A stretch of DNA of 64,000 nucleotides from Pavona decussata (Eukaryota): positions 248,001-312,000 of the forward strand of contig CDRNST010000263.1 in NCBI GenBank assembly GCA_977016875.1, read 5' to 3'. Position 1 is the first letter of the stretch. The number at the start of each line of letters is the position of its first letter. The translations under genes were made by a program, and so were the position numbers. This document shows, piece by piece, positions 373 to 50,402 of this stretch. The notes beneath the pieces are model-generated. The model saw nothing but the letters and a program-made list of their open reading frames with translations. It did no database searches and was not told the DNA's origin.

Positions 373-658
373 CTACAGTTCGTAATTTTGTAAGTTTGCT
401 TGTTCCGACCAAGCCGAGTATTGTGCTCCATCCATCTCAGGAGCCAACTCATTGCCCTCTTCTAGTTTGTGTCTATCTCCACCAATTGCAGCCTTGCATT
501 CGGGACACGTGCCTCTCTGCATTGCACCACCGCACTCACCAATGGCGTAGATGTGTCCCTGGGGACATTTGTACCAATGACCTTTGGTCAGACCAACCGC
601 TGACACGATCTGCTTCTTTTCTTGTGGTGTTAACGGATTGAGATCAGGGAAAGCCCTC
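373..658 (-). CDS. ZNFX1: ZNFX1 last coding exon (RZ-type zinc finger)
   Basis: GHWYKCPQGHIYAIGECGGAMQRGTCPECKAAIGG...LAPEMDGA..AWS is the ZNFX1/RNF213 RZ finger. Acceptor tag|G at 658. Five exons sum to 5508 nt (1835 aa plus stop). Confidence 0.95.
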
Positions 659-2739: not shown

Positions 2740-3315
2740 CTGGAAACAAGATTTTGTCGCATCGCTTAGCAATGTAGTTTATAACTGTTTCAATCTGGAC
2801 AAATTTCCATAGTCAGCACAATCCAAGTGTTCCAACCAAGATCAAATTAACAAGTGCCTCATTTATAAAAAATGAAGTTTTAAGTTCCGTTAATTGTTCC
2901 AATACTCATCTTCTAAATTTCAAAATGAGAGCTTCTTCATTTTGCTTTTAAGTCGTGTCAAATGTTATTTCAGTCGCTCAGAAATTGGCCAAAATAGCAG
3001 CAAATCAGCTTAAGAACTAAAAAAAGAAACCAAATGGCACATAGAAGTGAAGGGTCTCAGGCTTAAAAGGAGGAGAAAATGAAAACTGAAATGCTGATGA
3101 GAGATGTAGTAAGAAAAATGTAGTGAGAACCTCAAAAATGATATGTACAGAATTGGAATCGATTCATAGATTCTTCAGTTTTAGCCCTCCTAGCTGGCTC
3201 CAGAGGATGTCCCAAGGAGCTCCCAGAAGTCCTCTTTAACCGTTCTGCTGAATAAGGGTGACGCGGGATGCGAGAACGAAATCAGGAACGCTTTTGCACG
3301 AGAGATGATAACTAC

Positions 3316-5911
3316 CTGTCAAGATCGGCCACTGCAAAGACGTGCCCGCAATCTCGAAGCCTGATAAACCGTGCACCCTCGTCGTCCTCTCCACCCAAGA
3401 AAATTTTCGTAATTGGTTCACTTTCGTCATTTTTTGTGCATAAGGCACAAATGCACTCCTTCTCGCACATCAAACCACGACAAACATGGTAGCACTTCAA
3501 AATTTTATCACAGGGTACGTTGCAACGCGGTCTGTCACACGGTTCGTGGCATCGCTTGAAACATTTATGATGTCGACATTCCCACGAACAAAATTCCATA
3601 CAGGGATTGCATTGTTCTCCACACTTTTTGCCGCATCTACTGTGAAAGCAACGGTTTTCACAATGTCTGGAACAAGATGGGCATGGCGTGGTGCAGGCCT
3701 CTTTACACAAGTGAGAACAAACCAACATGCGCCCACACCTAAATTTACATCGCTTGTGCACTCGACCCATTCGACACTCGCCGCACGTCCCAGAGCACAG
3801 GTGACCACATTCCAAAGTGGCCCGACAAGGCATTGGGCAATTTGTTTGTGTGGCAGAGCAGGCAATGGTGACCTTGTGCCCACATGGCCAATCACTTCTC
3901 TTCACCAGCTCTTGGCACTCAGTTGTACATGGCTTTTTACAATGGTTCTGGCAGATATGGCCACACGATAGTATCTTGGCACATCGTTCTGTACAAGGAA
4001 CACTTTCGAGGTCCACCCCGCATTTCACCATCGCCATATGACCGCAGCCCGGCAACGCTTTCTCGACTTGCTCTTCACATTTCTCCAGGCAAGGTTCACT
4101 ACAACGCTTGGTACACGGATGAGCACAGTCTTTAATTTTTCTCGCACAAGGCTCCCCGCAGACGTACTCTTTATGTCGTGTGTCATAAGGATGGCAAAAT
4201 AGCTTGCACGCATGGCCGCACTCCAAGCGCACCTCGCATCTTAGCAGACATCCCCCGTCAGGAACTTTCTCGCTGAAATCTTCTGCTGTCTCGGCTGCTA
4301 CTTCCTCTCCATGGATTTGACAAACAAGGGGGACTGCGTTTCCGATGCTACTACTTTCTTTCAAATCTGCCACAATTTTGCTCCAGATGTCACTGTGTTT
4401 GGAGAGAAGGTCAAAGTTTCCGATGCAGTAAAAACCTTTTTTGGCACGAGAGAGAGCCACGCATGCACGGTTGATTGTCTTGATGAAGCCCACCTTCTCG
4501 TCCTTGTTGCTGCGCACCAGCGACAAAAGGATGATGTCGTTTTCTTCGCCCTGGAAGTTGTCAACGGTCGTCAAGCGAACACTTTCAAGGTTTTCGTTTT
4601 TGAGGCAGTCTCTCATGGCAAACATCTGTCCCGTGTAGGTTGTCAGAAGTGTTATCTGCTCAGCCTTGTAGCCTTGTTGAAGTAAGTACCGACACAGAGC
4701 AACTAGGAACGTAGCTTCGTGGTCGTTGGTATGACTGTGCGATTCATCATTTTGGTTCTCTAAGTGAAAGTGGTTGATAAAGAACATGCTCTTCTTCACT
4801 CCTTTGATGTCTTCATACTTTTCCACAGATTCGTGATTCTCAAGATCTTCGTAGATGTGTTTCATCAGGGCGGCAATTTCAGGCCTCATTCGATGTTGTA
4901 CAGACAGCTTCTCGCATTGAATTCCAACATTCACCATTCTCTCGAAGAGTGACACATCCAGTTTGTACTTCTTGGCCAATTCATAGACTGAAGGGTTTGG
5001 TCTAAGTTGCTGATGATCTCCAATCAAAATCAAGTGTTGACAACCCTTTGTCAATGATGTAATAATATGAGCCTCAAGCACCTCAGCCGCTTCTTCCACC
5101 AAGACGATTTTGGGGCAAATCTGCTGGAGAATATGGCGGTACTTGGCGGCGCCCGTGGTTGTCATGCCAATGACACGTGCTCTTCGAAGAACATCATACT
5201 CCTCCATCTTGTCTAGTTCCTTGTCACGTGACACTGCTTCTTCGAACTCTGCTTGGGTCTTTTGCAGTTGTTCCTGCAGGGAATTTTGTAACCTTTGACG
5301 CCACAACCTGTATAACTTCCAGCGGTCTTGTCTGCGTAAGTCATTAACATGGCGAACAGCATCCTCCTCCTCTTCGGTCATCACTTCTTTGCTTACTAAA
5401 TTCCTTTTCAAGTAACCTGGATTTTTCGCCTCGTTTAGAGAGACAACAGCTATTTCCCGTAGCGTAGCATTGGCGTCTCTGTCGAATCCCTCTTCGTTGT
5501 TAAAACAGTAACCTGGTGTCGCTACCTCCTTAAGAATATCATCTCTTTGATAATCACTTCGACTGTTTATTGATCCGTCACAGATGTCAACGTCAAGCCA
5601 CCTCAATAGCACCCCATTGATTGATCTTTTTGAAGCCATTCTCAAAAACTGAGCATAGTGCTTCCCTTTTATGCACGTTTGTCCTTTAACAGGTGCTTTA
5701 AAAACATCGAGAGAGATCATGCTCGATCTTGTAGCTTTTAACGTGAGGGAAGAGCGCTGGTAAGAACGCTTTTGTGATTTGATCTCGTATCTTGTTGTTC
5801 TTCTGGCAGGACCAACAGTACTTTGTGCTATCATCTTTAGTTTCTTCAGATTGTACTGCTCCAGCTTCGGACTCTTGCTTCGGCCACCAACCCGAACGAT
5901 ACCTGGAAACC
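3316..5911 (-). CDS. ZNFX1: ZNFX1 coding exon 2 (helicase core, NF-X1 Cys/His zinc-finger array, start of RING-like domain)
   Basis: IVRVGGRSK, GMTTTGAAKY, VEEAAEVLEAH, LIGDHQQLRP, QHRMRPEIA, TVDNFQGEE, NRACVALSRAK, many CGHxC repeats, DCGHVF. Acceptor at 5911 (or in-frame 5902). Donor GACAG|gtagtt at 3316. Confidence 0.95.
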
Positions 5912-6193
5912 CTGGAAACAGATAGACAGTACTTACAGTCATGCCGAGCTATTACAATGTCGTACTTAGATACCATGTTACTAACGGCCCGGAAACAGAT
6001 GGCTGATTAACAATGAGGTGCTTGATAAAAGCAGTCAAGAGCCGAAATAATGAGGGCCACCTTTTAAGTTAAGCTGCATCTTAAGCGATTTCTAAAAAAA
6101 AATAATACAGAACATCGGATAAATCCTATCCTAACATACAGTGTAACTTCATGAATCCGATTTCAGATTGTGTTGTTGTTTTTATTGTTCTTG

Positions 6194-6620: not shown

Positions 6621-6992
6621 TATTATTGTTGTAGATGTCATTATGGAAGGCAGCCCAATGTACTAACGACGTCTGTAGCTGTGTTGACGACTTTGGTCCA
6701 AATTTTCACTGATACAAGGTTTGAAGTCTTTTCTATCACACTACCTGCCCCTGAATTTTGACTTGGAAAACACAAAAGAGCAGCTAGCGCTTTGTGTTTC
6801 TCTTTAGGATGCATTTCCAGGCGAGTATTGTGAATTCGGTATCCATTATGTAAATGGGAAGCCCGCAAGAAAACCAGACAGTCAGTTAGTTAGTGGCATA
6901 GTGTAAACAGTCAGTCAGTCTGATGGCTATAGGAAGTAGTTAAAATGATTTAGTTAGGTCGGGAAGGTAGGTAAGTAACTAAGACAGTATAC

Positions 6993-8913
6993 CTTTCATG
7001 GGTAGAAGGCCTTCCAGGAATTGATCCAGGGCGTGATTTGTAAAGGACACCATTAAAATTGGCGATGTCGTCTTCTCGTCTTTCCAAAGAAAGGCGTTAT
7101 CCAAAAGAGCTCGAGCGATTTTCAAACCAACATACGTCTTTCCAGTGCCTGGTGGTCCTTGAATCACCGCCAATTGCTTGGTCAGCGCCAGTTTAAACGC
7201 ACCCATTTGAGATTTGTTTAAGCCCAGGATTTCTTTTTCAGGCCATTCGAAGATCACGTGAGACATCTCGTTGTCCATGGCATTGTCCAGGCTGTTCAAA
7301 GAGTCTGAGTTATCTTGCTGCGGGCTGAAATCATGTGCATGCGCAATGGATGCCTCTGACTTCTCAGGAGAAGCCAACTGAAAAGCTTGGGTTGCGCTTT
7401 CAGTGGTCTTGAGGCTGAGCTCATTTCCCACTTCTAGGTGAGAATACGGGCCTACACGCTGGTCGCTATCAGACGTTTTTGACGTTTTTTCCTTTGATAA
7501 TACACCACTGAAGTCAAACAAGATCGCATCTTTTTCTTCTCCTGCTTTGTTAAGTTGCAAGTGATATTCAGGAGGTCCAACATCCTGACAGCATTCCACA
7601 ATATGCCGCTGAAAGGGGAATTCTTCTGCTTTGATCTCCTTCAATGCTTCCAGCACGTGTCTGTAGGCTTCGAAGTACGCAGGCGACTCTAACATCACAA
7701 ACTTCTCCTCTCTTTGAATAAACTCATTTACTTGCGCCGATTCTACGTTTTCAAATCTTACTTCTAACTCACCCACACTCAGCCCATCGGGATCGCGATT
7801 TTCCACAGTTGCGAAAACCAGTGAGGCGAATTCATCTGGAGAGAGGCAGAGCAGCGAGCCAAATTTGAGTCGTTTAGATCTTCCCCACTTTACGTGCTTC
7901 ACTCTGGGATGAGAATGGTCAAATCTGATTCTGTAAAGCCTACCTTTCTTGCCGTATACAGGAGACAGAACTGTGACATTATAGTACGCAGAGACGTTTT
8001 CGGCGCGTCTGGCGTTCTTCGAAGAACTCGGTTCCAAAGAATGGTTATCTTTCGTTAGTTCTTTGATACCGTCACGAAGAGGCATTACAAAGTCTTCTCT
8101 TAGCAGACGAAACTGTACATCAAGGTAGTGATCCAAGTCTTTAAACTTTCTGTCCGTGATATTTTCACGAAGAAAAGGCCTGGAACAAAGCAGATCTGCT
8201 GCGTCAGGGATGACGCTGAGGTCTCTGAAATTCTGCGGAGGTTCGGTTTGGGAATCTTGAGCACTCGCAGTCATGGCTACACGAATCACCTCATCCTTTA
8301 AGTTTTTGACATTCTGTAGTTTCTCTTCAAGGCCGTCACCGTCTTCGATGAGATTTTTTTCATTCAGCGCGGCCAACGAGGCGCTGAGCTGCGGAAGAGG
8401 AAGGCCATGCACTATGCTTTCACCGAATCTCTGTATCATAGCATTGAAAACGACTGTAAGGCCATTAATCACAGTGCCAAATTTAGTATCGCTTGAGTAC
8501 GCCATCTCGTTTATGAAACGTGAAAGGACTGGTCCGGTGATAAACTTCTTCGCTTTGGGAGAGCGCAGTATTTTCTCTGCGTTTGCTGTTACCATGCTGT
8601 TTGACGAGCATAACAGCACAAATGAAGAAATAACCAGCTTCATTAAGTCGGGCCTAATCTCCTCCAAGCACAACAGCGCTTCGAACCGTCCGGCTTTGCT
8701 AGCTAGTTGTAAAATAGCATTTTCTGAGGATTCGTCTCTACAAATCTGTTCCAGCGCTTTGAACCCAATAGGTTTCGACACATCTTCTCTTCCTTGTTTA
8801 GCATCTCCGTCCGTCCGCTGACGTTTCGGTTCTACGGGACCCCTCGTAGGACTTCCGAATCCGCGTTTGCGACCACGTACCGGAGTGCCAATCCTTCTGT
8901 CGTTATGTGACAT
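6993..8913 (-). CDS. ZNFX1: NFX1-type zinc finger-containing protein 1, coding exon 1 (N-terminal region and start of the SF1/Upf1-like helicase)
   Basis: ORF has HYLDVQFRLLREDF, W-x-x-SKRLKFGSLLCLS, ESPAYFEAYRHVL, Walker A IQGPPGTGKTYVG and FTNHALDQFLEG, all typical of ZNFX1. The ATG directly follows an acceptor (tttcttag|ATG). Donor AAAG|gtatac at 6993, phase 1. Confidence 0.95.
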
Positions 8914-9141
8914 CTAAGAAATACTACAAAGTCAGCATGATGTTAATGTAAACATGATTCAAATCACCCTTGATCGATACTGTATCTGTACTCTACCCTG
9001 TTTTAGCATCTGAACTTACAATTTCTGAATCATAACATATTTCTCATCAAGATTTTCGTCGACAACAAAAAAGTCTCAGAATTAACTGGTGCTTATGACA
9101 ACAACCTGCAACAGTCTAACGCGTGATACCTACTTTTTTTG

Positions 9142-10077
9142 CACCAATCAATTCGAAACTTCAACCTCCCTTCCCGGGCACATTTTTTGGAAATTTGACC
9201 GTGTACCGTGCCCGGGGAGTGGGGAATTTTATTGGGGTGGAAAATTGAAACCGGAGTATCGTTTAGATGGCCTAGCGGAACTCCCACGTGAGTATTTGGG
9301 CGTTGAGGAGTTTTTCAAGGACGCGATCTCACCATTATTAGTGCCATGCTTAGCGAATGGCTCACTTCAAACGGTCTTTAAAACAGCTTTTGAAGGTTTC
9401 GTTAATATATCGCTGTGCACAAAACATGACCATTAAGTGGTTGATTGATTGATTGACATGACTGACTTATTGATTGATTTCAATCAATTCCAGCAGTGCC
9501 CATTCTCCCTCGGGCATTATCCAGGCATTTTTCAACATTGTCTGCCCCTTGGGTTGTGCATTAGCCTCAGTATCACGGGGCATTTGACCGCCTCATAATT
9601 CTCACCTCACAATACCGTCGCATCGTTACAATGATATGTTCACCAGCAAAGACAATAAATTCTTGATAAACTACGTCTGAGAAGGACATAATTAGGATGG
9701 TACATCCACGGAATGAAAGGTCATTGCCACTATTTAACTGAGAAATAGGACTTATCCGAGACTAAGTTTAGCGTGAATAATGATAAGCATAGAAGCGAAG
9801 AAATCAACATCTTTTTGAACTGGACCGTGGGGCATTTGACCAGCTCGTCTGTCCCGGCCGTGGGGCATTTGCCAGTTTATTTTCAAAAAATGCTAAAGTT
9901 CGGGGGTCATCCGGGAGTGGTGCCACTGTTGAAATTGACTAATGCATTAGGGTTGGGCATTTGAACGGTTTTTTTGATCCCGAGAGGTGAGAATTTGAAC
10001 AAGCCAATCTTCAAAAGTTCAAATATCCGGGGTTTGCCCAGCGGGGACATTGAAGTTTCGAATTGATCGGCGCATTA
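9142..10077. mobile_element. Nested MITEs in the ZNFX1 5' intron
   Basis: Outer inverted ends ATCAATTCGAAACTTCAAC and TTGAAGTTTCGAATTGAT; inner ATCAATTCCAGCAGTG (9484) and CACTGTTGAAATTGAC (about 9924); repeated GGGGCATTTG. Confidence 0.6.
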
Positions 10078-11246
10078 TGTTAAAATGTTCAATAAACTTG
10101 CAGCACAACTGGCGTACGCACTTCTGGTAGTTTTTAAGTCAAAATCAATTCACCGATTTCCCTTTTTTTTTTTACCGCCATGGACGCTAAGGAATTATGA
10201 CACTGATCTCCTTCAGATATTGTAACGTTTACAAACTAGACTATTGTTCTCTTTTTTTTTTTTTAATTTGTTGATCGCTCTCAAATTAAATTGCTTTTAA
10301 TTCGCCGTTTATTTACCCAATTGCGAGCTTGAGGCTCGCAAGTTCCAAAAAAATGGTGACAAAAATCGCGTGTAAAGGTTCGTTTACACATGCGATTTTT
10401 GACGCGACGTTTGTCGCACTCCACTGAAATTTCCTAGCGCTAGTCTTCGACTTCAAATCGCTCTTCGTTTTTCGAGAAATCCTACTTAATTTGCGTCTAG
10501 TTTCAAACCCGTGCAATGTTGCGGAGATAAATCGCGCTGAAATCGCTAAAATGTTACTTATTATCCTACAAATATACATAACCTTGTATTTGTTATCTTT
10601 TACTGCGAATGGGTTGGATGGAAGTGGATTACAACTTGAAAAAATTGGCCAATTTTTCAAGTTCTTCCTGGGTATTTTGGAGAAATTGCTTAAAACTGAT
10701 TTATAGTTTGTTCTTCATTGGACAAATCAGTTAATATTTTCCTCCCGGTACCCTAAGAAATATTCATGTTAAAGAAATGGTTCTATGTTAAATATTGGAA
10801 TAGCTTTGATCAAAACGCAGTAAAATCTCCGTGACAGTGCCTTTTTAATTTCGTGTGTCGGGGAGAAAAAAAGGCAAAATAGAGATCGTCTCCAGCTGAA
10901 ACAAAACTGTGCTTTGTTATCAATGTGTTGAATAATAAAACTGCTTTGCAGAATACCCCCTGATTTTAGCCAACTTGGCCGTAGGTATCAGGTGATATTC
11001 CGCGCGATTTCGAAGGATAATTTGCTAAATATGCACTGAATATAAAAAGTTCTCCAAGCGACTTTCAATTATAGCTGCACCGATGCGTTAATTTTTAAAT
11101 CAATCTCAGTTACGTAAGATGACTACCTAATCGACGACCTCTTTTTGTCGCCTTCTTGTAACAAGTTCACTCTCATACGATATTGATCGGTTGGGGTAGG
11201 CATTCGAAGGCAGATGAGAATTGGAAGTACCGTGCCGTTCTTTATG

Positions 11247-11883
11247 CAGGGCGTAACATGTCGATAATTTCTAAAGTCGATAGACATCGATCGAATTCGA
11301 TACTAATCAGTCGATAAAAATTGATCACAAGATTTCTTGTGATTATCAATTTTTATCGATTTTCAATGCTAAAATTCCATTTGATCGATTTTAATCGACA
11401 AGTATCTGAATACGAGAAAGACGTATGGCAGAAGATATAAAGACCGCAGTCCGAAAGCGGAATAACCAAACGGGAGCCAATCGGCCATAGCAAGGCTTCA
11501 TTAAACCCGGATTCAGTACACTGTATTAGAAGCTCAAGCAAAAATGAGGAGCAGCAAAATAACTCTATTCACATCAAATCTCCAAAAAACTCTTGAACGT
11601 TTGTTGCTTTTAGATAAACGTGGCTCAGGGAACATCAGTTCAGGTTATATTACAGGGAACGAAATCGGGCACGATCGAACGATGTAGCACGGCTGAACAA
11701 AATAATGTTAACTATTTCTCAAAGTATAAATCCCGGCTATTCTACATTTAATAACAACAGCATTTATAACAAACCACTTGGTTGCTCTGTTTTTATCGCC
11801 AATTATCGACAGATATCGAGTACTATCGACTTATCGACTACGTTCACGGCGATGATCGAATTCGATCGACAAGTTACGCCCTG
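11247..11883. mobile_element. MITE (hAT/P-like) in the ZNFX1 5' intron
   Basis: TIRs CAGGGCGTAACATGTCGAT and ATCGACAAGTTACGCCCTG; many ATCGAT subrepeats; flanks ctttatg and ctgtatg. Confidence 0.75.
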
Positions 11884-11934
11884 CTGTATGTAAGTGACGA
11901 AATAGCACAAACGAGAAGCTGTAATCAGACTTAC

Positions 11935-12000
11935 CTCCAAGACTGATTTCTCAGTGCATTTACATTATAAAATTGAAAAACTTAACCCCGCGAAATTTAT
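11935..12000 (-). other. ZNFX1: Probable non-coding first exon of ZNFX1 (upper boundary approximate)
   Basis: Perfect donor AG|GTAAGT (plus-strand acttacct, 11929-11936). The ZNFX1 ATG follows an acceptor, so an upstream UTR exon is expected. A GAS cluster lies immediately upstream. Confidence 0.5.
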
Positions 12001-12050
12001 GGAAGAACTCAAGCTGCCTGCCAGCTAAGACAAGACTAAAGTCTCATGAT

Positions 12051-12229
12051 TTCCCTGAAAAACGTATGTTCACCGGCAAATTCTTAGAACTCCAATGTGA
12101 CAAGTTGCCATTGGTTTTGATTGATGCACAATCCACAACATTCGATAGTTATTGGCCGTTATTCTTAGGCTGATGAATTCTCAGAAACAGCGGACAAGGT
12201 ATTTACCTCTTCCGGTTAATTTCCAAGAA
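12051..12229. promoter_or_regulatory. Cluster of four STAT-type GAS palindromes (TTCN3GAA) at the putative ZNFX1 promoter
   Basis: TTCCCTGAA 12051-12059, TTCTTAGAA 12081-12089, TTCTCAGAA 12178-12186, TTCCAAGAA 12221-12229, plus near-match TTTATGGAA at 11996. Confidence 0.65.
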
Positions 12230-46251: not shown

Positions 46252-46292
46252 TTCCCAGAATTCCCGGAAGAGTTTAATCGGCCTTCCCAGAA
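46252..46292. promoter_or_regulatory. Triple GAS (STAT) motif upstream of BTB copy 1
   Basis: TTCCCAGAA 46252-46260, TTCCCGGAA 46261-46269, TTCCCAGAA 46284-46292. Confidence 0.7.
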
Positions 46293-46368: not shown

Positions 46369-47265
46369 ATGGCCAACGAACAAGAGCCCACCAAAAAAGC
46401 ATCAACGAGTAATTTGCTCGTCTTTTCCAAGCCATGGGATCTCAGTGATTGTGTCCTGTTAGTTGAGAGTTCCACCTTCCACGTTCATCGCAATATCCTA
46501 ATGATGTGGTCCGATGTATTCAGACGAATGTTTACTGCAGAATTCAGAGAGAAGGCCTCTAAGGAAGTCGAACTACCAGGGAAGAAAGCTAACGAAATCC
46601 AAGAAATGTTGTTGATGATTTACCCTACTTCCTCGAAGCAAATCGACCAAAGCAACTTCTTGTTCTTGCTGAGCCTTGGTAGAGAGTACATGATGGCGAA
46701 GCTCACTGAGAAGTGTGAGGACTACTTAATACGCTGCCTTGAAAATCCCGAGCCGAATATTTCCTTTAATTTTCCAACTTATTCTTGCTATTTGTGTTTA
46801 GAGTTCCTTGACATCGCACAGGAATATGGGCTGGAGAGGTTGCAAGTTGTGTGCACAGAAAAGATACAAAACATTAGCTTCTACGAGCTAAGAAATCACG
46901 AGACGTACGAGAAAATCAGCCTTCCCAACTATCGAAAAATATTCGAGGGTAAGATTAAAAAGATGGAAGAACAGTTGAATGGCAAGGTACAGGAGCTGAA
47001 TGCCAAGAAGAATGAAGTATTGAGAGGTGAACAAGCACACAAGAATAAAATACAAGACCTAGAGTCCGCAAATAAAAGACTCAAATCTTATGCTTCCAGT
47101 GCCCTCAGGAAGTTTGAGAATGTTATACAAATTCTGGAATTTATCACTCCAGGCAAGTCTCCCCCAGTTCAGCGGGTTCCCGTTTATAGCAGTTATACGG
47201 ATCCCCTACATGAGAAATTAGTCAGAATTAAAACATTCAGATGGGTAGTTAAAGAAACTCTATGA
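46369..47265 (+). CDS. Intronless BTB/POZ-domain protein with C-terminal coiled coil (copy 1; last about 25 aa lost by frameshift)
   Basis: FSKPWDLSDCVLLVESSTFHVHRNILMMWSDVFRRMFTAEFREK...LPGKK...LLMIYP...EYMMAKLTEKCEDYL is a BTB domain; charged heptad-like region follows. Confidence 0.9.
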   Translation: MANEQEPTKKASTSNLLVFSKPWDLSDCVLLVESSTFHVHRNILMMWSDVFRRMFTAEFREKASKEVELPGKKANEIQEMLLMIYPTSSKQIDQSNFLFLLSLGREYMMAKLTEKCEDYLIRCLENPEPNISFNFPTYSCYLCLEFLDIAQEYGLERLQVVCTEKIQNISFYELRNHETYEKISLPNYRKIFEGKIKKMEEQLNGKVQELNAKKNEVLRGEQAHKNKIQDLESANKRLKSYASSALRKFENVIQILEFITPGKSPPVQRVPVYSSYTDPLHEKLVRIKTFRWVVKETL

Positions 47266-49257: not shown

Positions 49258-49386
49258 TTCAGAGAAGAGCAAAGAATTTGAGACAAAGCCTATTGGCTGC
49301 CTCATGATCAGTTAATAAACAGAACTTGTTTGTCAAAAGTTTCCGAGAAATCCCGGAAGAGTTTACTGACTTCCGAGAAGTCAGTA
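49258..49386. promoter_or_regulatory. GAS (STAT) motif cluster upstream of BTB copy 2
   Basis: TTCAGAGAA 49258, TTCCGAGAA 49341, ATCCCGGAA 49350 (one mismatch), TTCCGAGAA 49371. The last three are positionally homologous to the copy-1 sites. Confidence 0.7.
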
Positions 49387-49448: not shown

Positions 49449-50402
49449 ATGTCTCAAATAATGGCCAAACAAGCTGCAGCCAAAAATCTTATTGACTTCT
49501 CTAGGCCTTGGGAATTCAGCGATGTTGTTCTTCTTGTGGAAGGAAACAGGTTTTATGTCCATCGCAGTATCCTTGGAATATGGTCGCCTGTGTTCTCACG
49601 AATGTTTACTGCAGACTTCAGAGAGAAAACCGCCAGACAAGTCCCTCTTCCAGGGAAGAAAGCAAGCGAGATAAAAGAGCTGCTGCTTGTGATTTATCCA
49701 AGTTCCTCAAAACAGATAGATGAAAACAACTGCTTGTTCCTGCTAGATCTCGCCAGAGAATACATGATGAAGAAACTCACTGAGAAATGTGAGGACTATC
49801 TGATTGACTCCCTTGAAAAGCCCGGACAGCCGCAACCCGACGTTTACTACTCTGGACCTCGACAACTAAATCCCTGGAGACGCTGTTGCCTGAACCTCCT
49901 TGAGATCGCACAGTACTATGGATTGGAGACTCTTGAAACGGCCTGCATCAACAAGGCACAAAGCGTCAGCTTCACTGACCTGAAAAATCACGATATATAC
50001 AAGAAAATCAACCTTACCAACTATCGTAGGATAGTCGAGGGAAAGATTAAAAAGATGGAACAGGAGCTGAGTGCCAGAGAAAGGGATGTGCAAGAGTTAG
50101 AGTCCGCATTCAAGAGGAAAGTAGGAGAGCTAGATGGGGCATCTCAAGAGGTCAAATCTCGTGCTTCAAATGCGGTGAAAAAGTTTGAGAATGTTGTAAC
50201 TATTCTTGAATTTTTTGTTACCAAGTCTCGTCATAGTTCATTCTACTCCTATTATTCCGATTCCACTGATGACAAATTAGAATGCATTAGTGAATCAGGT
50301 GGTTATTTGGAGAGGCTTTATAATCCTCTGTCAGAACTGTACACTGATCTGCAAGCCATTATGCGTCATGCAAATGACATGAATTCGGCAGTACAGCGTT
50401 AA
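49449..50402 (+). CDS. Intronless BTB/POZ-domain protein with coiled coil (copy 2, apparently intact)
   Basis: DFSRPWEFSDVVLLVEGNRFYVHRSILGIWSPVFSRMFTADFREK; paralogous to 46369-47265 throughout. Start may be the ATG at 49461. Confidence 0.92.
   Translation: MSQIMAKQAAAKNLIDFSRPWEFSDVVLLVEGNRFYVHRSILGIWSPVFSRMFTADFREKTARQVPLPGKKASEIKELLLVIYPSSSKQIDENNCLFLLDLAREYMMKKLTEKCEDYLIDSLEKPGQPQPDVYYSGPRQLNPWRRCCLNLLEIAQYYGLETLETACINKAQSVSFTDLKNHDIYKKINLTNYRRIVEGKIKKMEQELSARERDVQELESAFKRKVGELDGASQEVKSRASNAVKKFENVVTILEFFVTKSRHSSFYSYYSDSTDDKLECISESGGYLERLYNPLSELYTDLQAIMRHANDMNSAVQR

What the first reader, a model, noticed from the sequence alone, without database searches (positions are those of the whole stretch)
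11929..12229. Hidden ZNFX1 first exon and a four-GAS promoter 3 kb upstream of the ATG
The ZNFX1 start codon abuts a splice acceptor, so transcription likely starts further up. A perfect AG|GTAAGT donor lies at 11935, and four perfect GAS sites follow within 300 bp in apparently unique sequence. An ETS-like CCGGAAG sits near 12334. The intervening intron is largely MITE-filled. This would place STAT control of ZNFX1 earlier in evolution than interferons (inference).
Basis: partly seen in the sequence, partly recalled or inferred. Interest (0 to 1): 0.7.

Follow-up and report, generated by a model that had tools for sequence, protein, structure and literature searches.

The report
Conserved four-GAS promoter of coral ZNFX1
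About 3 kb upstream of the start codon of a coral ZNFX1 antiviral helicase gene lies a promoter and short non-coding first exon conserved across coral species, carrying four STAT-type (TTCNNNGAA) sites; the same site arrangement recurs at a SOCS gene and a cGAS-like gene, and denser GAS clusters also sit at SOCS and at the STAT gene itself, pointing to STAT-driven antiviral gene control in an animal without interferon, though no RNA or binding data confirm it yet.

Summary
On the minus strand a consensus donor AG|GTAAGT ends a putative exon at 11935. Four perfect TTCNNNGAA sites lie at 12051-12229, with a fifth at 12302. The sequence is single-copy in the 602-Mb genome. Five sites in 260 bp never arose in 1000 simulated windows.

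Comparative evidence backs most of the interpretation. In six other coral contigs (87-57% protein identity) the intron runs from 0.8 to 8.3 kb and is mostly unalignable. The module is nonetheless kept: 3-4 GAS sites with invariant half-sites and drifting spacers, CCAAT boxes, and a donor at a fixed distance. An AG|ATG acceptor abuts the start codon in every species. Two ZNFX1 paralogues nearby carry a CCAAT-GAS-GAS-exon-donor core.

A composite GAS-CCGGAAG-GAS occurs 18 times genome-wide against 0 for the control. It marks ZNFX1, two BTB genes in this window, a cGAS-like gene and a SOCS gene. The STAT gene has seven GAS sites upstream.

Weak points remain. Four RNA-type runs gave no contig on 11934-12327, and one low-depth contig reads colinearly through the acceptor. 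STAT binding is inferred.

The scan had already noted GAS-type promoters elsewhere in this genome.

The parts
12221..12229 (-). GAS1, TTCTTGGAA
   Evidence: Kept as TTCNNNGAA in L002, L003, L004, L005 and L051 with spacers TTG/TTG/TGG/TCG/TAA/CAG, 282-327 nt before the donor. Absent in L006.
12208..12217 (-). ETS-like AACCGGAAGA between GAS1 and GAS2
   Evidence: Invariant in the window, L002, L003 and L004; degenerate in L005, L006 and L051. It is part of the genome-wide composite GAS-(2-6)-CCGGAAG-(5-35)-GAS, 18 hits against 0 for the control.
12178..12186 (-). GAS2, TTCTGAGAA
   Evidence: Half-sites invariant in all six aligned species. L051 has TTCAAGGAA at the same distance from the donor.
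12149..12158 (-). CCAAT box 1 (CGGCCAATAA; CCAAT = 12155-12151)
   Evidence: CCAAT is invariant in six species, 211-245 nt before the donor (166 nt in L006).
12110..12114 (-). CCAAT box 2
   Evidence: Present in the window, L003, L004 and L005. The paralogues carry CCAAT about 161 nt before their donor.
12081..12089 (-). GAS3, TTCTAAGAA
   Evidence: Half-sites invariant in six species. It lies 148-162 nt before the donor in six species.
12051..12059 (-). GAS4, TTCAGGGAA
   Evidence: Kept as TTCNNNGAA in all seven species (spacers AGG/CGG/CGG/GCG/TCA/TCG/CGC), 121-130 nt before the donor (90 nt in L006).
12302..12310 (-). Fifth TTCNNNGAA, not conserved
   Evidence: L002 has TTTTATTTA at this place.
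12334..12340 (+).
   Evidence: It lies in a 13-nt stretch absent from L002 and L003.
11935..12045 (-). Putative non-coding exon 1; the 5' end is not mapped and is placed just downstream of GAS4
   Evidence: The 3' end of the exon and the donor are conserved in seven species, and the GAS4-to-donor distance is constant. It has no in-frame ATG leading into exon 2. No RNA contig covers it in four runs.
11951..11959 (-). Two-codon upstream ORF ATG-CAC-TGA in exon 1
   Evidence: An ATG-NNN-stop at the same place occurs in L002, L004, L006 (both modules) and L051. It is lost in L003 and L005.
11929..11934 (-). Splice donor GTAAGT, after exon-final AG at 11936-11935
   Evidence: AGGTAAG is invariant in six species. 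L051 has GAG|GTAGGT.
8914..11934 (-). Intron 1 (3021 nt), about half of it TIR-bounded elements
   Evidence: TIR pairs at 11246-11265/11865-11884 and 9140-9170/10044-10074. The 11.2-11.9 kb element is absent from L002. Orthologous introns measure 833-8320 nt. Six ATGs lie in the 186 nt before the start codon, which argues against this stretch being a 5'UTR.
8914..8935 (-). Splice acceptor: CTGAC branch motif, pyrimidine tract, and AG abutting the ATG
   Evidence: AG|ATGTC is present in the other loci read at that place: L006, L007, L051, L052 and both L053 genes.
6979..8913 (-). First coding exon of ZNFX1 (644 aa open frame)
   Evidence: Pfam ZNFX1 domain 4e-28 and AAA_11 2e-10. More than 100 homologous open frames of about 640 aa were found in coral-type contigs.
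373..606 (-). RZ-type zinc-finger exon, the C-terminal end of the gene
   Evidence: Pfam ZnF_RZ-type 8e-25.

Best explanation
Window 12045-12230 (minus strand) is the TATA-less core promoter of the coral ZNFX1 gene, and about 11935-12045 is its short non-coding first exon. The exon is spliced across a 3-kb transposon-laden intron to an acceptor that abuts the start codon. The promoter consists of two pairs of STAT-type dyads (TTCNNNGAA, mostly TTCYNRGAA), an ETS-type site between the distal pair, and two CCAAT boxes. The likely mechanism is as follows. The coral's STAT, a gene found on another contig, binds the paired dyads as dimers, possibly cooperating in pairs. An ETS factor and NF-Y act alongside it to switch ZNFX1 on together with other defence genes that carry the same composite: a cGAS-like receptor, two BTB genes and ZNFX1 paralogues. 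A SOCS gene and the STAT gene itself carry dense GAS clusters, which would supply feedback. What is shown: the motifs, their rarity, their conservation, their fixed position relative to a conserved donor, and the recurrence of the composite. What is inferred: the transcription start, the splice, the identity of the binding factors, and inducibility.
For: Cluster statistics. Single-copy status. Orthologous modules: L002, L003, L004, L005, L006 and L051 (87, 81, 68, 69, 60 and 57% protein identity). In L004 the only alignable upstream piece is the module. GAS half-sites and CCAAT are invariant while the spacers vary. GAS3 and GAS4 lie 148-162 and 121-130 nt before the donor in six species, although the intron ranges from 833 to 8320 nt. 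L006 shares an EGLN-type upstream neighbour with the window, which shows orthology. The own-genome paralogues at C263:211374 and C263:230555 have CCAAT-GAS-GAS, then about 120-140 nt, then a donor. The composite GAS-(2-6)-CCGGAAG-(5-35)-GAS gives 18 genome hits against 0 for the reversed control, about 12 independent families. The stricter form gives 7 against 2, and 3 of the 7 lie in this window. Composite neighbours are a Mab-21 nucleotidyltransferase open frame and an SH2+SOCS-box open frame. The SOCS locus has 12 GAS sites in 3 kb, with GAS-ETS-GAS-GAS just before a TATA box. The STAT gene is shown by colinear STAT_int, STAT_alpha, STAT_bind (twice) and SH2 exon hits, with 7 GAS sites in the 1 kb before its ATG. 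STATs recognise TTCN3-4GAA (PMC3670263).
Against: Contigs of four RNA-type runs give zero depth over 11934-12327. The one contig that covers the start codon (X1, 411 nt, depth 4.6) is colinear with the genome from 8690 to 9099, so it is not spliced at 8914. No 11935-to-8913 joint was listed. These runs have low depth on the gene (3-16), three of them are only guessed to be RNA, and a second run shows other intronic contigs, so pre-mRNA or DNA carry-over can explain this. No binding, accessibility or induction data exist for this species. In Nematostella, STAT knock-down did not measurably reduce 2'3'-cGAMP-induced genes (PMC8713801). Only one of at least 70 Mab-21 genes carries the composite, and no composite hit lies on the same stretch as any of the five IRF genes found, so any regulon is selective. 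Most composite neighbours could not be identified.
Confidence: 0.6

Rival explanations
1. The module is real and conserved, but it is an inducible alternative promoter or enhancer. In unstimulated tissue ZNFX1 would be transcribed from a start inside or downstream of the transposon-rich 'intron', so that exon 1 is rarely used.
For: The X1 contig is colinear across the acceptor up to 9099. X2 has low-depth colinear contigs at 9048-10884 but none beyond about 10.9 kb. Repeats at 10555-11145 are very highly represented in RNA contigs. L006 carries two tandem modules, which shows that alternative first exons exist in this gene family.
Against: Six ATGs lie in the 186 nt upstream of the start codon, and a textbook branch site, pyrimidine tract and AG abut the ATG in every species. 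This fits an intron, not a 5'UTR. The intron sequence is not conserved beyond close relatives. The contigs are of very low depth, and for three runs their RNA nature is a guess.
Confidence: 0.17
2. The promoter and exon are real, but the TTCNNNGAA dyads are read by another dimeric factor rather than STAT, so the link to STAT signalling is false.
For: No binding data exist for any cnidarian STAT in the papers searched. Nematostella STAT knock-down had no measurable effect on cGAMP-induced genes. Cnidarians lack a canonical JAK according to PMC3670263.
Against: The dyad has exactly the N3 spacing and mostly the TTCYNRGAA form of STAT sites, with no N2 or N4 variants. The densest clusters found sit at a SOCS gene and at the STAT gene itself, the classic feedback and autoregulatory targets of STATs (the target status is from general knowledge).
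Confidence: 0.18
3. The motifs are a chance cluster in neutrally conserved DNA and have no regulatory role.
For: The motif was chosen after looking. The window-wide count equals expectation. The closest relatives (L002, L003) are alignable over much of the upstream region, so conservation there is uninformative.
Against: 0 of 1000 simulations reach the cluster. The module is the only alignable upstream piece in L004 and is recognisable in L005, L006 and L051. Half-sites are invariant while spacers change. Paralogues at about 50% identity keep GAS pairs. The composite count is 18 against 0.
Confidence: 0.03

Closest known systems
Mammalian CISH (CIS) promoter with four STAT5 sites in two tandem pairs
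   Same: Four TTCNNNGAA dyads arranged as two pairs just upstream of the transcription start, mostly of the TTCYNRGAA form. Pairing is compatible with cooperative (tetramer) binding. This comparison rests on my own recollection of the literature and was not checked here.
   Different: Here the gene is an antiviral helicase of a cnidarian. Spacing within pairs is 21-34 nt between sites. An ETS-type site sits inside the distal pair and CCAAT boxes between the pairs. The promoter is followed by a non-coding exon and a 3-kb intron. No cytokine, receptor or canonical JAK is known upstream.
Interferon-gamma-activated-site (GAS) promoters of vertebrate interferon-stimulated genes; ZNFX1 itself is interferon-induced in mammals
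   Same: The same dyad motif and the same class of target gene, an antiviral nucleic-acid sensor of the ZNFX1 family.
   Different: Cnidarians have no interferon (PMC8713801). The canonical JAK with a pseudokinase domain is described as confined to Bilateria (PMC3670263). The activating signal is unknown.
Drosophila Socs36E / STAT92E feedback target with clustered STAT sites
   Same: Clusters of TTCNNNGAA sit at a SOCS gene (12 in 3 kb at G000:C28) and at the STAT gene. This is the logic of a STAT feedback loop. The Drosophila facts are from general knowledge.
   Different: Here this occurs in a non-bilaterian. PMC3670263 places recruitment of SOCS promoters by STAT sites with the assembly of the canonical pathway, which it puts at the emergence of Bilateria.
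GAS-type motif upstream of the JAB/E1 gene cluster of the same genome
   Same: The same kind of 9-mer, usually in pairs, just upstream of defence-like genes, and reported as conserved in other cnidarians.
   Different: Different genes on another contig. I did not re-test that note. The ETS-containing composite and the non-coding exon architecture are described here.

Membership tests
ZNFX1 (NFX1-type zinc-finger-containing 1) helicase gene | ZNFX1-specific domain (Pfam PF25396) | tested here: met
   E 4.4e-28, residues 303-410 of the 6979-8913 open frame.
ZNFX1 (NFX1-type zinc-finger-containing 1) helicase gene | UPF1-like SF1 helicase core (AAA_11 + AAA_12) | tested here: met
   AAA_11 at the end of exon 6979-8913. 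AAA_11 1.8e-14 and AAA_12 7.4e-41 in 3312-5942.
ZNFX1 (NFX1-type zinc-finger-containing 1) helicase gene | C-terminal RZ-type zinc finger | tested here: met
   PF20173, E 8.2e-25, in 373-606 (-). The same domain appears downstream in orthologous loci.
ZNFX1 (NFX1-type zinc-finger-containing 1) helicase gene | NFX1-type zinc fingers between helicase and RZ finger | not tested
   The middle exons were not analysed.
STAT-responsive (GAS) promoter | Palindromic TTCN3GAA dyads near the transcription start | tested here: met
   Four conserved sites at 12051-12229, with N3 spacing only.
STAT-responsive (GAS) promoter | Sites under selection: half-sites kept and spacer free across species | tested here: met
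   Alignments A1 and A2 and the distance table for seven species and two paralogues.
STAT-responsive (GAS) promoter | A STAT with a DNA-binding domain and SH2 encoded in the genome | tested here: met
   G000:C8, about 3609765-3623500: colinear STAT_int, STAT_alpha, STAT_bind (twice) and SH2 exon hits. STAT_int, STAT_alpha and both STAT_bind hits are below Pfam's whole-protein cut-off; only the SH2 hit (24.1 bits against 21) is above it.
STAT-responsive (GAS) promoter | Physical binding of STAT and STAT-dependent transcription | not testable with these tools
   Needs EMSA, DAP-seq or ChIP, and knock-down. The only related experiment found is negative for Nematostella STAT knock-down after cGAMP (PMC8713801).
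STAT-responsive (GAS) promoter | An upstream activating tyrosine kinase or cytokine pathway | not tested
   The canonical JAK is reported as unique to Bilateria (PMC3670263). No kinase was searched for in this genome.
Non-coding first exon with U2-type intron | Consensus donor and acceptor in the gene's orientation, conserved across species | tested here: met
   AG|GTAAGT is invariant in six species. AG|ATG with a pyrimidine tract occurs in all loci.
Non-coding first exon with U2-type intron | Transcripts that start upstream and join exon 1 to exon 2 | tested here: not met
   No contig lies on 11934-12327 and no such joint was listed in four runs. One contig is colinear across 8914. Power is low: depth 3-16, contigs only, and the RNA status is guessed for three runs.
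ETS-binding site | Core (A)CCGGAAG(T), conserved | tested here: met
   AACCGGAAGA is invariant in four species. 13 of the 18 composite hits read CCGGAAGT. The factor itself is untested.
CCAAT / NF-Y box | A conserved CCAAT pentamer at a fixed distance from the start region | tested here: met
   CCAAT is invariant in six species, 166-245 nt before the donor. NF-Y binding is untested.
MITE content of the intron | Short elements bounded by terminal inverted repeats, present or absent between relatives | tested here: met
   TIR pairs at 95% and 87%. The 11.2-11.9 kb element is missing in L002. Copy number in the genome was not counted.

The most novel reading that the evidence does not exclude
Stony corals run an interferon-free, JAK-free STAT regulon. 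A composite STAT-ETS-STAT element would drive a selected set of antiviral sensors and adaptors: the ZNFX1 family, a cGAS-like receptor and BTB genes, perhaps also the JAB/E1 cluster noted elsewhere in the scan. STAT would autoregulate through its own GAS cluster and be restrained by a GAS-rich SOCS gene. The STAT-to-SOCS feedback loop and STAT control of ISG-like genes would then predate Bilateria and interferon.
Probability: 0.45. Interest if true: 0.85.

Novelty: new variant of a known kind. Interest (0 to 1): 0.72.

Why it matters
Cnidarians induce many homologues of interferon-stimulated genes on viral mimics, but the transcription factors responsible are unknown. In Nematostella, knock-downs of STAT and of single IRFs gave no measurable effect (PMC8713801). 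A deeply conserved, precisely positioned set of STAT-type sites in the ZNFX1 promoter gives concrete sequences to test by EMSA, DAP-seq, reporters and knock-outs. So do the same composite at a SOCS gene and a cGAS-like gene, and the GAS cluster at the STAT gene itself. If confirmed, STAT control of antiviral genes and the STAT-SOCS feedback loop would be older than interferons and the canonical JAK, against the published view that the pathway was assembled in Bilateria (PMC3670263). In practical terms, gene models of coral ZNFX1 that start at the ATG probably miss a first exon 0.8-8 kb upstream, along with the true promoter.

Tried and rejected
RNA support.
- Read laying on 7600-13500 with four runs gave no coverage of the proposed exon and no exon1-exon2 joint.
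- A search with the first 150 residues, aimed at short transcript-derived fragments, returned six proteins. The best one (L007, JGI) is an unspliced, DNA-type contig.
- A scan of metagenome contigs with the 3' end of exon 1 alone found nothing.
- I did not search with a joined exon1-exon2 sequence.

Identifying further composite neighbours.
- Ten open frames from the 3-kb loci gave no Pfam family.
- The five IRF genes found do not lie next to composite hits.

Other checks.
- Rfam found nothing in 8900-13600.
- The Pfam STAT_bind search at the default threshold was blank. Only relaxed thresholds and colinearity revealed the gene.
- L052 (56% identity) shows no clear module. A Polinton-like insertion lies upstream, so I left it out of the counts.
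- P0040 gave no DNA.
- Six of the seven literature searches ran (one search was rejected for a mis-typed term). They found no paper on cnidarian STAT target sites or ZNFX1 promoters.

Readings considered and rejected.
- Heat-shock elements need 2-nt spacing, and there are none in the module.
- An ETS-IRF composite has the wrong spacing.
- A coding exon 1 is excluded, because its frame is closed by TAA 11 codons before the donor.

Full report
**What is there.** The gene lies on the minus strand. The 644-aa open frame 6979-8913 carries the Pfam ZNFX1 domain and the start of a UPF1-like helicase. Open frame 3312-5942 carries AAA_11/AAA_12, and 373-606 an RZ-type zinc finger. The window therefore holds a complete ZNFX1-type gene.
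- The ATG (8913-8911) follows directly on AG, which is preceded by a pyrimidine tract and a CTGAC branch-type motif. An in-frame TAG overlaps that AG.
- Three kilobases upstream, AG|GTAAGT ends a possible exon at 11935.
- TTCNNNGAA occurs at 12051, 12081, 12178 and 12221, and a fifth time at 12302.

**Is it more than chance?** The window as a whole has the expected number of sites (30 against 30.5). The cluster itself is rare.
- Five sites in 260 bp were reached in none of 1000 Markov simulations, and four sites in 5 of 1000.
- Of the 64 possible triplet-N3-complement dyads, only this one occurs in 12040-12235. There are no N2 or N4 variants.
- The stretch is single-copy in the 602-Mb assembly.

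**Comparative evidence.** The 644-aa exon has more than 100 homologues as open frames of similar length in coral-type contigs. I fetched seven loci with flanks.
- In the two closest (87% and 81% protein identity), much of the upstream region still aligns.
- In L004 (68%), the only alignable upstream piece is window 12140-12217.
- A profile of the module finds it again in L005 (69%, E 1e-29), L006 (60%) and L051 (57%).
- L006 shares the upstream EGLN-type neighbour with the window, so it is an orthologue.
- The alignments show invariant TTC and GAA half-sites with drifting spacers, an invariant CCAAT, an AACCGGAAGA block identical in four species, and an invariant AGGTAAG donor.
- The geometry is fixed. 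GAS3 lies 148-162 nt and GAS4 121-130 nt before the donor in six species, GAS1 and GAS2 lie 240-327 nt before it, and CCAAT 166-245 nt. The intron meanwhile ranges from 833 to 8320 nt.
- The other loci read at that place (L006, L007, L051, L052 and both L053 genes) have AG|ATGTC at the start codon.
- L006 has a second, shorter module (CCAAT, two GAS sites, donor) 0.85 kb further up.
- A TARA metagenome scaffold with tandem ZNFX1 genes has four GAS sites and two CCAAT boxes 1.2 kb before the second gene.
- Two paralogues of the same genome, 17-37 kb left of the window (51% and 49% identity), carry ATTGG-CCAAT-GAS-GAS, followed at about 120-140 nt by a donor.

This is the footprint of a functional promoter with a short first exon.
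- The exon cannot be coding, because TAA closes the frame 11 codons before the donor.
- It holds a two-codon upstream ORF that recurs in most species.
- The 186 nt just upstream of the ATG contain six ATGs, which fits an intron better than a 5'UTR.

**RNA evidence.** This is the weak point. Contigs of four runs were laid on 7600-13500. One run is a declared coral metatranscriptome; the other three are only guessed to be RNA.
- The coding exon is covered at depth 3-16.
- Nothing lies on 11934-12327 in any run, and no 11935-to-8913 joint is listed.
- The only contig over the start codon (X1, 411 nt, depth 4.6) is colinear with the genome from 8690 to 9099.
- X2 has further low-depth colinear contigs inside the intron. 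These libraries therefore carry pre-mRNA or DNA, and the colinear contig is not decisive.
- Other routes to transcript contigs failed.
- As required, I did not search with a joined exon1-exon2 sequence. The spliced form is untested by that route.

**Why STAT.** The distal GAS pair encloses an ETS-type site, and the two BTB genes of this window (46252-46292, 49341-49379) have the same arrangement.
- Genome-wide, TTCNNNGAA-(2-6)-CCGGAAGAG occurs 7 times against 2 for the control. Three of the seven are in this window.
- The looser composite with a second GAS occurs 18 times against 0, in about 12 independent families, and 13 of the 18 read CCGGAAGT.
- One hit ends 12 nt before the ATG of a Mab-21 nucleotidyltransferase, that is, a cGAS-like gene. 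Another lies about 5.8 kb upstream of a ZNFX1-like paralogue on C143.
- One hit sits just before the TATA box of an SH2+SOCS-box gene, whose 3-kb locus holds 12 GAS sites where about 1.4 are expected.
- The genome encodes a STAT (colinear STAT_int, STAT_alpha, STAT_bind and SH2 exons on C8) with seven GAS sites in the kilobase before its ATG.
- SOCS and STAT genes are the classic direct targets of STATs (general knowledge), and STATs read TTCN3-4GAA (PMC3670263).

Together this makes STAT the most likely reader of the dyads, but no binding or functional data exist. Nematostella STAT knock-down had no measurable effect on cGAMP-induced genes, and the authors list incomplete knock-down among the possible reasons (PMC8713801).

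- The CCGGAAG at 12334 lies in a 13-nt lineage-specific stretch. The conserved ETS-type site is at 12208-12217.
- There are five perfect sites, of which four are conserved.
- The intron is about half TIR-bounded elements, and one of them is absent from the closest relative.

**Comparison with known systems and novelty.** The architecture resembles GAS promoters such as CISH (recollection, not checked). The feedback logic resembles Drosophila Socs36E/STAT92E. The setting is new: a cnidarian without interferon, and without a canonical JAK according to PMC3670263, which places the assembly of the pathway and the recruitment of SOCS promoters in Bilateria. I found no paper describing cnidarian STAT target sites or ZNFX1 promoters. 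Earlier notes of this scan had flagged GAS-type promoters in this window and at a JAB/E1 cluster of the same genome. I re-examined the BTB promoters but not the JAB cluster.

**Verdict.**
- The promoter and first exon are very likely real (about 0.8).
- A wider interferon-free STAT regulon is possible (about 0.45).

Noticed in passing
L035 = G000:C28:391719-394779: An SH2+SOCS-box gene (open frame L035:1821-2402) has 12 TTCNNNGAA sites in 3 kb. The order GAS, reversed ETS, GAS, GAS lies directly before a TATAAATA box and a CCAAT. This suggests a STAT-to-SOCS feedback loop in a non-bilaterian.
   Followed up: partly
L022/L025 = G000:C8:3608000-3624499: The STAT gene is shown by colinear STAT_int, STAT_alpha, STAT_bind (twice) and SH2 exons. 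Seven TTCNNNGAA sites lie in the 1 kb upstream of its ATG (L022:1766), so autoregulation is possible.
   Followed up: partly
L042 = G000:C156:620740-623779: The GAS-CCGGAAGAG-GAS composite ends 12 nt before the ATG of a Mab-21 nucleotidyltransferase (cGAS-like) open frame. A second Mab-21 gene lies 2.4 kb upstream. Only this one of at least 70 Mab-21 hits in the genome carries the composite.
   Followed up: partly
window 46252-46292 and 49341-49379 (+): Two paralogous intronless BTB genes (open frames 46369-47265 and 49449-50402) have GAS-CCGGAAGAG-GAS about 80-100 nt before their ATG. Three of the seven genome-wide hits of the strict composite lie within 37 kb of each other in this window.
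   Followed up: partly
G000:C263:211374 and 230555 (L023:6460-6650, L024:4895-5085): Two further ZNFX1-type genes lie on the opposite strand, 17-37 kb left of the window. Each has a homologous ATTGG-CCAAT-GAS-GAS module followed by a donor, 1.2 and 3.0 kb before its ATG. More ZNFX1-like copies cluster on C51 and C143.
   Followed up: partly
window 11951-11959 (-): A two-codon upstream ORF (ATG-CAC-TGA) sits about 25 nt before the donor. It recurs as ATG-NNN-stop in L002, L004, L006 (both modules) and L051, so it may control translation.
   Followed up: no
window 12159-12170 (-): A conserved block GCCTAAGAATAA lies directly before CCAAT box 1 (CCTNANAATAA in six species). I can name no factor for it.
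   Followed up: no
window 10555-11145, 12430-12471 and 12919-13312: Repeats with very high depth in RNA-type contigs, up to about 10,000 in the coral metatranscriptome run. They look like abundantly transcribed repeat families. There is no Rfam match.
   Followed up: partly
L006:8119-8319 and 8928-9174: In the 60%-identity orthologue the promoter and first-exon module is duplicated in tandem, giving two alternative first exons. The intron there is only 833 nt.
   Followed up: partly
L052:480-5421: A Polinton/Maverick-like element (integrase and family-B DNA polymerase genes) is inserted upstream of ZNFX1 in one relative. No clear GAS module was found there.
   Followed up: no
window 23678-24289 (-): An open frame with a MYND zinc finger sits upstream of ZNFX1 in the same orientation, probably an EGLN/PHD-type prolyl hydroxylase. 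A 2OG-oxygenase exon sits at the matching place in L006, so synteny is conserved.
   Followed up: partly
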